DNA of 63,530 nt, filler included, from Octopus bimaculoides (Eukaryota): NCBI RefSeq assembly GCF_001194135.2. It is 7 parts of 7 records of this genome, joined end to end, with 100 filler letters (N's around TTAATTAATTAA, not from the genome) between each part and the next. Parts side by side here need not be neighbours in the genome. Positions count along the whole stretch, not along the records: positions 60,301 to 62,194 come from NW_026410979.1; 6 more parts are not named here. The stretch is one strand, 5' to 3'. Made by a program: the position numbers and the translations under genes. Within the stretch, counting starts at the first letter, position 1. Each line of letters begins with the position of its first letter. The notes beneath the pieces are model-generated. The model saw nothing but the letters and a program-made list of their open reading frames with translations, made no database searches and was not told the origin of the DNA. Below are positions 20,327-62,489 of the stretch, piece after piece.

Positions 20327-20959
20327 GATAGATAGATAGATAGATAGATAGATACATGCATGCATACATACATACATGCATGCATACATACACACATACG
20401 TACAAATATACATACGTACATACATGCGTACATACATCCAAACATACCTACCTCAAAACATATACATACATACATACATACATACATACGTACGTACGTA
20501 CATGCGTATATGCGTACATGCATACATCCAAACATACATACATACATACATACATACATATGAGTCAATCAACAAACGAAAGTGGTACGCAACACATTTG
20601 GTAGAATCTACATAAATTATTTAATAACAGTCAGGCATCAAGATGTTAATGACTTTAGTTTGTTCTACGAGCCTATGAAATTTTAAGTTGCACGGAACAG
20701 AATTAAACTGTTACTATATAATACATACGGGTGCACATGAATATATATAAATGTTTGCGTAAACGGGAGAAAATGACTTAATACGAATAGACTATGTTTT
20801 TGTTGCTTGAAGAATCGTACTTAGAGGTTCTGTAAAGGATGTCGATTAGTTACGAATGAATGTGTCGTAGGCAGGGGAAGATGGGTAAATAAACAGATAA
20901 ATATTTGAGCAAATAAGCAGGTAAGTAACAACTTGAACGAAATAAAACATTAACACAGA

Positions 20960-21037
<78 letters not shown>

Positions 21038-60300: not shown

Positions 60301-60789
60301 TGGAATGGAGTGAGAGCGCTGTAGTTTTGGTACACCTCGTGATCTAGCAAATTCCAGTGAATCTCGTAATTTACTATATTGCCGTGAACGTGAACGGCCT
60401 TGCTTGGATGTATATGGCTCTACATTAATGTGATAGTCTGATACATATTGTGGAGGCCGTCTGTCACCACTCACTGCAGATACGTTTACGGGAGATGGTA
60501 TTACATCGTGGTAATAGTCTGATACATATCGTGGACTATGTGGTGGTTCAAGTGGCTCTATATTCATGTGATAGTCTGATACATATCGTGGACTATGTGG
60601 TTGTGGAATGGAGTGAGAGCGCTGTAGTTTTGGTTGTGTGGTGAAGTGAGGGTGCTGTCGTTTTAGCACCCCTAGTAATCTAGGAAGTGCCCGTGCATCT
60701 CGTAATTTACGAAATTGCCGTGAACCTGAACGGCGTTGCTGGGATATATGTGGCTCTACATTAATGTGATAGTCTGATACATATCTTGT
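60301..60789 (-). CDS. Probable coding exon segment: repeat protein with four YVSDY(H/Y) motifs
   Basis: 163 stop-free codons between two gaps; repeat spacings of 57, 81, 303 and 336 nt are all multiples of 3. Confidence 0.65.
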
Positions 60790-61660
60790 NNNNNNNNNNN
60801 NNNNNNNNNNNNNNNNNNNNNNNNNNNNNNNNNNNNNNNNNNNNNNNNNNNNNNNNNNNNNNNNNNNNNNNNNNNNNNNNNNNNNNNNNNNNNNNNNNNN
60901 NNNNNNNNNNNNNNNNNNNNNNNNNNNNNNNNNNNNNNNNNNNNNNNNNNNNNNNNNNNNNNNNNNNNNNNNNNNNNNNNNNNNNNNNNNNNNNNNNNNN
61001 NNNNNNNNNNNNNNNNNNNNNNNNNNNNNNNNNNNNNNNNNNNNNNNNNNNNNNNNNNNNNNNNNNNNNNNNNNNNNNNNNNNNNNNNNNNNNNNNNNNN
61101 NNNNNNNNNNNNNNNNNNNNNNNNNNNNNNNNNNNNNNNNNNNNNNNNNNNNNNNNNNNNNNNNNNNNNNNNNNNNNNNNNNNNNNNNNNNNNNNNNNNN
61201 NNNNNNNNNNNNNNNNNNNNNNNNNNNNNNNNNNNNNNNNNNNNNNNNNNNNNNNNNNNNNNNNNNNNNNNNNNNNNNNNNNNNNNNNNNNNNNNNNNNN
61301 NNNNNNNNNNNNNNNNNNNNNNNNNNNNNNNNNNNNNNNNNNNNNNNNNNNNNNNNNNNNNNNNNNNNNNNNNNNNNNNNNNNNNNNNNNNNNNNNNNNN
61401 NNNNNNNNNNNNNNNNNNNNNNNNNNNNNNNNNNNNNNNNNNNNNNNNNNNNNNNNNNNNNNNNNNNNNNNNNNNNNNNNNNNNNNNNNNNNNNNNNNNN
61501 NNNNNNNNNNNNNNNNNNNNNNNNNNNNNNNNNNNNNNNNNNNNNNNNNNNNNNNNNNNNNNNNNNNNNNNNNNNNNNNNNNNNNNNNNNNNNNNNNNNN
61601 NNNNNNNNNNNNNNNNNNNNNNNNNNNNNNNNNNNNNNNNNNNNNNNNNNNNNNNNNNNT

Positions 61661-62003
61661 CACATAAACATCTCTTAGTTTTCTCGTTTTTTGAATAGTC
61701 ACGTTTTGCTGTTTCATCAACATCGTTTAACTGGTCATTGTTTTGACCTTCCTTAACATCTATTTGAATCATTTCCATCACATCACCAATATGATTCCCA
61801 GTATTATTTTCACGATCGTCGTCTTGAGAATCAATATGTCCTGTATTTTCTTCTGTAAAATCCTCGCATTCATTCAGTCCTGTAGATTTGTGTAATCCCC
61901 CATTTAGAACATCTGGATATTGTGAATGGTCTGCCATTTTCACAGTTTCGGAACAGAGGTTCTCATAACACTTCGAAAAAACATCACTCTCTGTGGTAGC
62001 CAT
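61661..62003 (-). CDS. Probable 5' part of the same large exon (acidic N-terminus)
   Basis: CCAG|A-ATG-G context at 62003; about 114 stop-free codons MATTESDVFSKCYENLCSETVKM...DSQDDDRENN...KRCLC running into a gap. Confidence 0.55.
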
Positions 62004-62489
62004 TCTGGTCAATTTAATTGACTCTCAATGAAGAGAAATGAAACTAAATGATTTAATCATGATTTAATTTCAACTATGACGTCATCAATGATTGTGACAT
62101 TCATTTTGGCATCGTGTAGTCGTCGTAGTAGTCGTAGGAACAGGAGCAGCAGTACTAGTAGTAGTAGGATGGTGGTGTACTTACGTCCCCGTAANNNNNN
62201 NNNNNNNNNNNNNNNNNNNNNNNNNNNNNNNNNNNNNNTTAATTAATTAANNNNNNNNNNNNNNNNNNNNNNNNNNNNNNNNNNNNNNNNNNNNTAACAT
62301 GCGTTTTCTCCAATCCTTAAATTCTTAAATATACTCAAATACCCAAAATTTCAAGGAGTTCCTGCCTTAAAAACCACAGTTATTTTGTGTTCTTTGCTAC
62401 ATTGGTTTCTATTAACCCATTTATTCTATCAGAAGAATTTTTATTCATTAAGATAGAAGAAATACACATAATTATATATATGTGTGTGT

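What the first reader, a model, noticed from the sequence alone, without database searches (positions are those of the whole stretch)
60301..62003. Unrecognised protein with an acidic N-terminus and nested YVSDYH tandem repeats
Seen: two stop-free minus-strand blocks (about 114 and 163 codons) on either side of an 871-N gap. The second reads TRYVSDYHINVEP…RSGSRQFRKLRD…PKLQRSHSIPQPHSPRYVSDYHMNIEP…PHSPRYVSDYYHDVIP…PQYVSDYHINVEP…RSRSRQYSKLRD…PKLQRSHSIP. Short repeats are nested in a unit of about 101-112 aa, and every spacing is a multiple of 3, which is hard to explain without coding selection. I recognise no family. Inference: a lineage-restricted disordered protein with repeated Tyr motifs and RxxS-type sites, perhaps a multivalent phospho-scaffold or structural protein. 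The gaps probably hide more units.
Basis: partly seen in the sequence, partly recalled or inferred. Interest (0 to 1): 0.7.

Follow-up and report, generated by a model that had tools for sequence, protein, structure and literature searches.

The report
Octopus-only disordered repeat protein gene
The piece is a broken-up copy of a real but uncharacterised protein-coding gene that is found only in octopuses. It belongs to a small family of single-exon, tandemly duplicated genes for floppy, motif-rich proteins that all share one promoter element, and nobody knows what they do.

Summary
On the minus strand, an ATG at 62003 opens 114 acidic codons that run into an 870-N gap. After the gap, 163 stop-free codons carry nested RYVSDYH repeats with spacings of 33, 57, 81, 303 and 336 nt.

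At the nominal gap length the two blocks are one base out of frame. A search of 1.84 billion protein representatives found eight relatives, and all the named ones are Octopus vulgaris or O. sinensis hypothetical proteins. Some of these have the same acidic N-terminus, then about 240 non-repeat residues, then the same repeats, all in one exon. The expected spacing of 795-909 nt fits the gap, so the two blocks are parts of one gene. The gap hides mainly the non-repeat centre, not many more units.

Coding is well supported. Six O. vulgaris paralogues have intact ORFs of 1.4-2.8 kb, their indels are multiples of 3, and a neutral simulation keeps the frame open in 1.6% of runs or fewer. Sequence constraint is weak (dN/dS 0.6-0.9).

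AlphaFold gives almost no confident fold. There is no signal peptide, membrane segment or Pfam domain. All eight promoters share an invariant cAMP-response-element (CRE) palindrome, TGACGTCA, about 80-140 nt before the start codon.

Function is untested. My best guess is an intracellular scaffold that presents many short binding motifs. Interest is moderate to low.

The parts
62112..62167 (.). Trinucleotide (TAC/GTA)-type microsatellite at the upstream limit of the conserved promoter
   Evidence: TRF. The O. vulgaris paralogues carry (TAC)n/(TAA)n at the same place in the promoter alignment.
62069..62087 (-). Conserved promoter block TGATGACGTCATAGTTGAA. It holds the palindromic cAMP-response element TGACGTCA at 62077-62084, 81 nt before the ATG.
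   Evidence: It is present in all 8 family promoters. TGACGTCA (8 nt) and AGTTGAA (7 nt) are the two longest invariant runs in the 487-column alignment of promoter plus N-terminal coding DNA. In the window the upstream frame has stops, so this conservation is non-coding.
62017..62029 (-). Near-palindrome ATTGAGAGTCAAT in the conserved leader or core promoter, 14-26 nt before the ATG
   Evidence: Conserved across the 8 promoters (CATTGA is invariant). Its role is not tested.
61660..62003 (-). Block A: the start codon and 114 codons of the acidic N-terminal region (pI 4.4), plus 2 bases (GA) of the next codon
   Evidence: It is 81-84% identical in protein and 89-91% in DNA to the N-termini of three O. 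vulgaris paralogues. The relatives continue with E (GAx) at the point where the window has GA before the gap.
60790..61659 (.). Assembly gap (870 N, estimated length). It is inferred to hide the non-repeat, basic, Ser-rich central region of about 240 aa and the first one or two short repeats.
   Evidence: The colinear single-exon relatives P0004, Ov597 and Ov643 place 795-909 nt between the equivalents of the two flanks. The nominal length breaks the frame by 1 nt.
60301..60789 (-). Block B: 163 codons of the basic (pI 10.4) repeat array, cut off by the edge of the piece
   Evidence: It hits P0001 at E 3e-61 and P0002 at E 3e-18. Together with block A it hits P0004.
60751..60786 (-). Motif copy 1, RYVSDYHINVEP (aa 2-13 of block B)
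   Evidence: motif survey
60553..60588 (-). Motif copy 2, RYVSDYHMNIEP (aa 68-79), preceded by QPHSP
60496..60531 (-). Motif copy 3, RYVSDYYHDVIP (aa 87-98), preceded by PPHSP. This is the 'YVSEYHH-type' flavour.
60415..60456 (-). Motif copy 4, PPQYVSDYHINVEP (aa 112-125). PPQY fits the PPxY consensus.
60598..60664 (-). 33-nt tandem duplication (KRQHPHFTTQP / KLQRSHSIPQP). It makes unit 1 eleven residues longer than unit 2.
   Evidence: TRF; codon comparison
60604..60621 (-). RSHSIP (aa 57-62), which fits the RSxSxP pattern. A second copy lies at 60301-60318, at the edge of the piece.
   Evidence: The 31-nt stretch around it is 100% identical between the two copies.
60340..60375 (-). SKLRDSLEFARS (aa 139-150), the only predicted helix in the window's repeat block
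   Evidence: AlphaFold. The equivalent short helices recur once per unit in P0004.

Best explanation
The piece is a fragment of one protein-coding, probably single-exon gene. The gene belongs to a small, unnamed family seen so far only in Octopus.

The encoded protein has four parts:
- an acidic N-terminal region, which is block A;
- a basic, Ser-rich, non-repeat centre of about 240 aa, hidden in the assembly gap;
- an array of short motifs in two alternating flavours, QPH(S/T)(S/P)RYVSEYHH.V.P and DRRPP(R/Q)YVSDYHI(N/H)VEP, separated by RS-rich linkers with one short helix per unit, which is block B;
- a conserved basic helical tail ending in FKRIN, in the full-length relatives. That tail would lie beyond the edge of the piece.

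Shown here: homology, gene layout, conservation of the reading frame, predicted disorder, absence of export or membrane signals, and a promoter conserved across the whole family with an invariant CRE palindrome.

Inferred, at about 0.3 on its own: the protein stays inside the cell and acts as a flexible multivalent scaffold. Its repeated Tyr/Pro motifs (including PPxY) and basophilic Ser sites would recruit partners. Unequal crossing-over would change how many motifs it carries. Transcription would be driven through a CREB/ATF-type factor.

The confidence of 0.75 applies to the identity and anatomy (a family member, coding, one gene, disordered, intracellular type), not to the inferred mechanism.
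For: One gene. P0004 (O. vulgaris CAI9723199, 798 aa, E 2e-93) matches block A with its residues 1-124 and matches block B in several further stretches. P0004 and its neighbours of 597 and 643 aa are single exons with this order of parts.

Close relationship. Window block A plus 110-165 nt upstream is 89-91% identical in DNA to two of these paralogues and 87% to the third.

Gap. The relatives predict 795-909 nt between the flanks, against 870 N.

Coding. Six O. vulgaris paralogues have intact ORFs of 1386-2784 nt at 69-94% pairwise DNA identity. Their indels are multiples of 3. A neutral simulation keeps the ORF open in 1.6% of runs or fewer.

Motifs. A survey found 28 copies in 9 proteins, with Y invariant and R, Y and P nearly so. 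Even the distant members P0005 and P0006 keep one (R/Q)YAPEY.

Disorder. 650 of 798 residues of P0004 have pLDDT below 50, and only isolated helices are predicted. The window's block B has mean pLDDT 48.8.

Intracellular. The highest 19-residue Kyte-Doolittle hydropathy in any member is 0.61 or less, and the N-terminus is hydrophilic.

Promoter. The CRE block is invariant in all 8 genes.

Restricted distribution. There are 8 hits at E of 0.001 or better among 1.84 billion representatives, and the named ones are Octopus.
Against: - The gap itself is unread, so continuity and frame in this particular copy are not shown. This copy could be a broken paralogue.
- dN/dS of 0.57-0.92 and the 2 synonymous versus 16 non-synonymous changes between the window's own units show little constraint on sequence. 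That is also what young pseudogenes or barely functional genes would give.
- I could reach no transcript or protein evidence. All relatives are computed gene models.
- The AlphaFold alignments were shallow (10 and 3 rows), which by itself lowers confidence.
- The PPxY and RSxSxP matches are pattern matches only. RSHSIP is not conserved in P0001, P0003 or P0004.
- The CRE is a consensus match, and no binding was tested.
Confidence: 0.75

Rival explanations
1. It is a non-coding tandem repeat or satellite, or a dispersed transposon fragment, whose open frame is accidental.
For: The assembly breaks lie in repeats. The piece ends inside a 31-nt stretch that is 100% identical to an earlier one, and the gap edge sits at a motif copy. 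Changes between units are mostly at codon positions 1 and 2.
Against: The frame is open in 1 of 6 frames (2 of 2000 shuffles). The same frame is kept in proteins of other octopus genomes down to 37% identity. Family ORFs stay intact, with 3n indels. In about 90 kb of Octopus loci the repeat occurs only inside family genes. There is no transposon domain. Only 8 proteins match in the whole library.
Confidence: 0.03
2. This particular copy is a decaying or artefactual paralogue: a pseudogene, or a mis-scaffolded chimera of two different family members joined across the gap. The family itself is real.
For: The nominal gap breaks the frame. The family has several paralogues that are 84-94% identical and lie close together. 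That invites collapse and mis-joining on a 1.9-kb scaffold. dN/dS is near 1.
Against: Both visible blocks are fully open. Their orientation, order and spacing match the intact relatives. Gap lengths are only estimates.
Confidence: 0.15
3. It is a nuclear SR-related protein for RNA processing or nuclear speckles, as NCBI's name for P0006, 'serine/arginine repetitive matrix protein 2-like', would suggest.
For: The regions are basic and rich in R and S, with 10 RS/SR dipeptides in block B, and the protein is disordered.
Against: No SRRM2 or other RNA-processing domain reaches the Pfam threshold in any member. RS density is far below that of true RS domains. The name looks compositional. The conserved motifs are Tyr/His/Pro-based, not RS-based.
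Confidence: 0.12
4. It is a secreted or extracellular structural protein, a Tyr/His-rich material of sucker, beak, skin or egg case.
For: It has Tyr-, His- and Pro-rich tandem repeats, and it is a lineage-specific cephalopod gene. From my own knowledge, cephalopod structural proteins such as suckerins, reflectins and beak His-rich proteins are repeat-rich and taxon-restricted.
Against: There is no signal peptide or hydrophobic segment in any of 8 members. The conserved N-terminus is acidic and hydrophilic, and the start codon is conserved. The composition is not Gly/Ala/His-type or Met/Asp-type, judged by inspection.
Confidence: 0.05

Closest known systems
Octopus vulgaris hypothetical proteins CAI9723199.1 (P0004, 798 aa) and its unlisted neighbours of 597 and 643 aa on chromosome OX597818.1 (93.91-93.95 Mb)
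   Same: The acidic N-terminus is the same (81-84% aa, 87-91% nt). The promoter is the same, with the CRE block. The alternating RYVSDYH / RYVSEYHH motif array is the same. The parts come in the same order, in a single exon.
   Different: The repeat units are built differently. The window has a unit of 101-112 aa with three motif copies and PKLQRSHSIP. O. vulgaris has a 54-aa unit with RSQWEAIVRRLRSTEQ. Block B is only 76-83% identical in DNA, in patches. The window copy is incomplete, so its centre and tail are unseen. It comes from a different, closely related species or paralogue.
Database fragments P0001 and P0002 (UniParc UPI00078A2778 and UPI00078A21BC; source organism not given by the tools)
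   Same: These are the closest matches to block B. P0001 scores 63% identity by BLASTP over 98% of the query and 77-81% in the other alignments. P0002 scores 55-61%. The motif flavours and the KLRDSL..ARSRGVP linker are the same.
   Different: The unit is shorter, because it lacks the RYVSDYHMNIEPLEPPHSP sub-unit. They have RSNFTAQP where the window has RSHSIPQP. Both are truncated models with no DNA or genomic context on record.
Second subfamily: O. vulgaris CAI9722905/CAI9722906 (P0007, P0008) and O. sinensis XP_036359032 (P0006, 'SRRM2-like')
   Same: The acidic N-terminus is homologous (52-57% aa). The central region and the promoter with the invariant CRE are shared. The O. vulgaris models are single-exon and tandemly arranged.
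   Different: The C-terminal repeats are entirely different (..TWDPDTSRWSRDFDDS(I/L)AE(L/F)W.., GPDPFSA, LRDSLELARSRGVP..). P0006 keeps one (R/Q)YAPEY motif, and P0007 and P0008 keep none.
Multivalent short-linear-motif scaffolds in general, for example PPxY-bearing adaptors of WW-domain proteins and RSxpSxP 14-3-3 clients (named from established knowledge, not from a tool)
   Same: They are disordered, lack a fold, and repeat short conserved motifs between variable linkers. One PPxY and two RSxSxP pattern matches fall in the visible part.
   Different: There is no homology to any of them and no binding data. RSxSxP is not conserved among the relatives. This is a resemblance in how it may work, not membership.

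Membership tests
Unnamed Octopus family (exemplar CAI9723199.1) | Homologous acidic N-terminal region of about 115 aa | tested here: met
   81-84% aa identity over 114 residues to three O. vulgaris paralogues and 52-68% to the others. 24 columns are invariant across 8 sequences.
Unnamed Octopus family (exemplar CAI9723199.1) | Conserved proximal promoter with the TGACGTCA block about 80-140 nt before the ATG | tested here: met
   Window 62069-62087. The block is invariant in 8 of 8 promoters.
Unnamed Octopus family (exemplar CAI9723199.1) | Array of alternating RYVS(D/E)YH motifs (the YVS subfamily) | tested here: met
   There are four copies in block B, against a 28-copy survey of the family.
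Unnamed Octopus family (exemplar CAI9723199.1) | One uninterrupted exon from the ATG through the centre and repeats to the basic tail ending in (F/S)(K/R)RIN | not testable with these tools
   The centre lies in the 870-N gap and the tail lies beyond the edge of the piece. Order, strand and spacing agree with the relatives.
SRRM2 / SR-related proteins | A recognisable N-terminal domain of that family, or a dense RS domain | tested here: not met
   Pfam finds no SRRM2 or other RNA-processing domain above threshold in the window blocks or in 8 relatives. Block B has only 10 RS/SR dipeptides in 163 aa.
Satellite DNA or transposable element | Dispersed or non-genic copies, with no conserved reading frame or with transposon protein domains | tested here: not met
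   Copies occur only inside family genes in about 90 kb of loci. The frame is conserved, with 3n indels. There are no transposon domains. A whole-genome copy count was not possible.
Secreted cephalopod structural proteins (suckerin, reflectin or beak-protein type) | A signal peptide (for the secreted ones) and the characteristic composition or motifs | tested here: not met
   Maximum 19-residue hydropathy is 0.61 or less and the N-terminus is hydrophilic. There is no sequence hit to any such protein. The motif comparison rests on my own knowledge.
PPxY ligands of WW domains / mode-1 14-3-3 clients | The consensus motif is present and conserved, and binding is demonstrated | tested here: inconclusive
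   PPQY lies at aa 112-115, and RRPP(R/Q)Y is conserved in most relatives. RSHSIP occurs twice in the window but not in the relatives. Binding cannot be tested here.

The most novel reading that the evidence does not exclude
Octopuses may have evolved a private family of CRE-driven, intronless genes for charge-segregated disordered proteins, acidic at the head and basic in the motif array and tail. Motif number would be reshuffled quickly by unequal crossing-over. The proteins would act as signal-regulated multivalent hubs or condensate formers in neurons or in male germ cells. That would make it a taxon-restricted regulatory innovation rather than evolutionary noise.
Probability: 0.15. Interest if true: 0.6.

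Novelty: new member of a known kind. Interest (0 to 1): 0.35.

Why it matters
Cephalopod genomes hold many taxon-restricted genes whose roles are unknown. This family is compact and easy to work with: single exons, two tandem clusters on one chromosome, a sharply conserved CRE promoter, and motif arrays that turn over quickly. Those features make it a convenient case for asking how orphan disordered proteins arise, stay in frame under weak sequence constraint, and acquire regulation.

For the scan, the practical result is more modest. The finding is a real gene fragment, and its odd look comes from an assembly gap and a scaffold end that fall in repeats. Related gene models are already in public databases as hypothetical proteins.

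Tried and rejected
- Pfam on both window blocks and on 8 relatives found nothing real. The CCDC85 and COMM_HN scores for P0004 come from summed weak repeat hits with no single stretch passing.
- A PDB sequence search found nothing.
- Rfam on the piece found nothing.
- The word-indexed protein search found no candidate at all for block A. Only the exhaustive representative search found the N-terminus.
- The metagenome DNA scan with an 18-mer from the motif returned 10 loci. BLAST showed all were chance matches of 18-29 nt (18-19 nt exact), so that scan was wasted.
- Exact-protein look-ups of P0001 and P0002 found no contig.
- Literature searches for the motif strings, for the accession numbers and for a description of the family returned nothing relevant.
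- My first codon comparison of block B with the O. vulgaris repeats was out of register and is discarded (last three lines).
- I did not run a fold search, because neither model has a confident globular part.
- I considered reflectin, suckerin and beak-protein kinship and protamine-like sperm proteins, and dropped them on composition and on the lack of any sequence hit.
Full report
**What is in the piece**

The usable sequence runs from 60301 to 62194, and the gene reads on the minus strand. An ATG at 62003 has an in-frame stop seven codons upstream. It opens 114 codons (MATTESDVFSKCYENLCSE...KNEKTKRCLC) that end at 61662, followed by two more bases (GA) and then 870 N at 60790-61659.

After the gap, 60789-60301 is open for all 163 codons in one frame only and runs off the edge of the piece. 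Block A is acidic (pI 4.38) and block B is basic (pI 10.44).

Block B contains these repeats:
- a 143-nt unit, twice, at 85% identity, spaced 336 nt;
- the RYVSDYH core, four times;
- a 31-nt PKLQRSHSIP stretch, twice, at 100% identity, spaced 303 nt;
- one 33-nt tandem duplication.

All spacings are multiples of 3. An open frame as long as B's arises in 2 of 2000 dinucleotide shuffles. For one 336-nt unit the figure is 8 of 2000, and for A it is 46 of 2000.

**The gap**

At the nominal length, block A's frame continues into frame +1 of block B and stops after ten codons. For one continuous ORF the true gap must be 1 modulo 3. Because the length is only estimated, the sequence alone cannot settle this. 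Relatives can.

**Relatives**

The word-indexed search found only three short database fragments for block B and nothing for block A. I then ran the exhaustive search of 1.84 billion representatives, using A and B joined as one query. It returned eight proteins.

P0004 (798 aa, E 2e-93) matches A with its residues 1-124 and matches B in further stretches. P0005 to P0008 match the N-terminus. The named ones are all Octopus:
- O. vulgaris CAI9723199, CAI9723197, CAI9722905 and CAI9722906, all labelled 'hypothetical predicted protein';
- O. sinensis XP_036359032, labelled 'serine/arginine repetitive matrix protein 2-like'.

**Gene layout in O. vulgaris**

The genomic loci show that the O. vulgaris genes are single exons, because each gene span equals 3 x (aa + 1).

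Four paralogues of 468, 597, 798 and 643 aa lie within about 32 kb at 93.91-93.95 Mb of chromosome OX597818.1. The last two are head to head. Two more paralogues, of 461 and 927 aa, lie at 51.59-51.61 Mb.

The window's block A plus 110-165 nt upstream is 89-91% identical in DNA to the 597- and 798-aa paralogues and 87% to the 643-aa one. The duplicated unit runs from about 175 nt upstream of the ATG to more than 1 kb past the stop.

**What the gap hides**

In P0004, Ov597 and Ov643 the N-terminal ...KR(C/S)xC is followed by EVADDKN. That agrees with the window's GA before the gap. After that come about 240 non-repeat residues, and only then the first motif.

The first RYVSDYH-type motif, which is what block B starts with, lies 795-909 nt after the equivalent of the gap's upstream edge. 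That is within 10% of the 870 N.

I conclude that A and B are two parts of one gene. The gap holds mainly the non-repeat centre plus at most one or two 27-aa sub-units. The rest of the array and the conserved basic tail lie beyond the edge of the piece.

Both assembly breaks sit in repeats. The piece ends inside the perfectly duplicated 31-mer, and the gap's downstream edge is a motif copy. Continuity in this particular copy remains unproven.

**Is it coding?**

The sequence itself is under weak constraint:
- Between the window's two units there are 2 synonymous and 16 non-synonymous codon changes, with differences at codon positions 1, 2 and 3 of 10, 7 and 2.
- dN/dS is 0.57-0.80 for block A against the O. 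vulgaris genes, and 0.69-0.92 among the paralogues.

The reading frame is under strong constraint:
- All six O. vulgaris paralogues have intact ORFs of 1386-2784 nt at 69-94% pairwise DNA identity.
- Essentially every indel between them is a multiple of 3. The few 1+8 and 1+20 pairs sum to multiples of 3.
- Random substitution at comparable divergence leaves the ORF open in 1.6% of simulations or fewer.

The same frame and the same motifs persist in P0003 at 37% identity. The selection acts on frame, composition and short motifs rather than on the linkers.

**Anatomy of the protein**

A survey of 28 motif copies in 9 proteins shows two alternating flavours: QPH(S/T)(S/P)RYVSEYHH(N/D)V.P and DRRPP(R/Q)YVSDYHI(N/H)VEP. 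The first Tyr is invariant. The Arg, the second Tyr and the closing Pro are kept in 24 of 28 copies. Even the distant P0005 and P0006 keep one (R/Q)YAPEY. The second flavour contains PPxY.

Between motifs lie RS-rich linkers (RSGSRQFRKLRD, RSRSRQYSKLRD) and one short helix per unit.

AlphaFold on P0004, with a 10-row alignment, gives mean pLDDT 43, with 650 of 798 residues below 50. The only predicted elements are isolated helices at 318-345, in four of the repeat units, at 740-763 (RRIFKKAATKLRDKVHSIFGKK) and at 788-797. The window's block B gives mean pLDDT 48.8 and one helix, SKLRDSLEFARS. The alignments are shallow, so low confidence is weaker evidence of disorder than usual. Composition points the same way.

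No member has a hydrophobic segment or a signal-peptide-like start; the highest 19-residue hydropathy is 0.61 or less. In P0004 the charge is segregated: the N-terminus is -20, the centre +14, the repeats +19 and the tail +12.

No Pfam, PDB or Rfam match is real.

**Promoter**

The 115 nt before the ATG is about as conserved as the coding DNA (74-90% against 75-92%). It is non-coding, because the window has stops in the frame that happens to be open in O. vulgaris.

Within it, TG(A/G)TGACGTCA(T/C)AGTTGAA is present in all eight genes. TGACGTCA and AGTTGAA are the two longest invariant runs in the whole 487-column alignment of promoter plus N-terminal coding DNA.

TGACGTCA is the palindromic cAMP-response element recognised by CREB/ATF/CREM factors. 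That is established knowledge. Binding was not tested here.

A near-palindrome, ATTGAGAGTCAAT, sits just before the ATG. A (TAC)n microsatellite marks the upstream limit of the conserved region.

**How it probably works**

Shown: it is an intracellular-type, largely disordered protein with a conserved acidic head, arrays of conserved short motifs that vary in number, a conserved basic helical tail in the full-length relatives, and a shared CRE promoter.

Inferred, at roughly 0.3: it is a multivalent scaffold whose Tyr/Pro motifs (including PPxY) and basophilic Ser sites (eight RxxS, two RSHSIP) recruit partners in a phosphorylation-dependent way. Its valency would be tuned by unequal crossing-over, and its expression would follow cAMP/CREB-type signalling.

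RSHSIP is not conserved in the relatives, so I give the 14-3-3 idea little weight.

As a general prior only, one comparative study reports that genes dating to the octopod ancestor are most highly expressed in male reproductive tissues, and that many novel genes are expressed in the nervous system (PMC7656900). Fast evolution, lack of introns and tandem duplication would fit either tissue.

**Rivals**

- A satellite or transposon is essentially excluded by frame conservation, gene-restricted copies and the small family size.
- A broken or mis-joined copy cannot be excluded for this scaffold (about 0.15).
- SR-protein kinship rests on a compositional name only.
- A secreted structural role conflicts with the absence of any export signal.

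**Novelty and verdict**

The family already sits in public databases as hypothetical proteins. It has no Pfam family, and I found no paper on it.

The window copy is a new, incomplete member from an octopus closely related to O. vulgaris. The closeness shows in dS of about 0.10-0.16 to the O. vulgaris paralogues.

It is a real and mildly interesting orphan family, not a new kind of system. Interest is 0.35.

Noticed in passing
window 62069-62087 (CRE core at 62077-62084): The promoter block TGATGACGTCATAGTTGAA, with a perfect CRE palindrome, is invariant in all 8 family genes. It holds the two longest invariant runs in the 5' alignment.
   Followed up: yes
window 62017-62029: The near-palindrome ATTGAGAGTCAAT, 14-26 nt before the ATG, is conserved across the family. 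It may be a core-promoter or leader element.
   Followed up: partly
window 62112-62167: A (TAC)n-like trinucleotide microsatellite lies here. The O. vulgaris paralogues carry (TAC)n or (TAA)n arrays of different length at the same promoter position.
   Followed up: partly
window 60301-60331 versus 60604-60634, and the gap edge at 60789: The piece ends inside a 31-nt stretch that is 100% identical to an earlier copy, and the gap's edge sits at a motif copy. Both assembly breaks coincide with repeats, so the unit number in this copy is unknown.
   Followed up: partly
L011 4572-6503 (-) and 10001-12397 (+); L012 10001-11407 and 18569-20362: Four O. vulgaris paralogues lie within about 32 kb, two of them head to head. 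The 597- and 643-aa genes were not returned by the protein searches, probably because they cluster with P0004 at 50% identity.
   Followed up: yes
L013 3324-4709 and 10001-12784; L014 10001-13982 and about 20381-21007: A second subfamily shares the N-terminus and the CRE promoter but carries quite different repeats (..VDPEEFQHQV.PF.(S/T)WDPDTSRWSRDF(D/E)DS.AE.W.., GPDPFSA). L014 holds a second, more divergent copy about 10 kb downstream.
   Followed up: partly
L014 10001-13982: The RefSeq model for P0006 spans 3982 nt for 1134 aa and does not translate straight through, unlike the single-exon O. vulgaris models. It may hold an intron, or a model patch over a repeat or frameshift.
   Followed up: no
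L011 1838-2290 and 14230-14770: A 150-aa ORF looks by eye like the N-terminal DNA-binding part of a Tc1/mariner transposase. A long block of simple-sequence repeats lies between the family genes.
   Followed up: no
P0004 residues 740-763 and P0003 C-terminus: A conserved basic amphipathic helix (RRIFKKAATKLRDKVHSIFGKK) is followed by TW(A/S)PD(T/R)SF. It is the most confidently predicted element (pLDDT 77-89) and echoes the TWDPDTSRW repeat of the other subfamily.
   Followed up: partly
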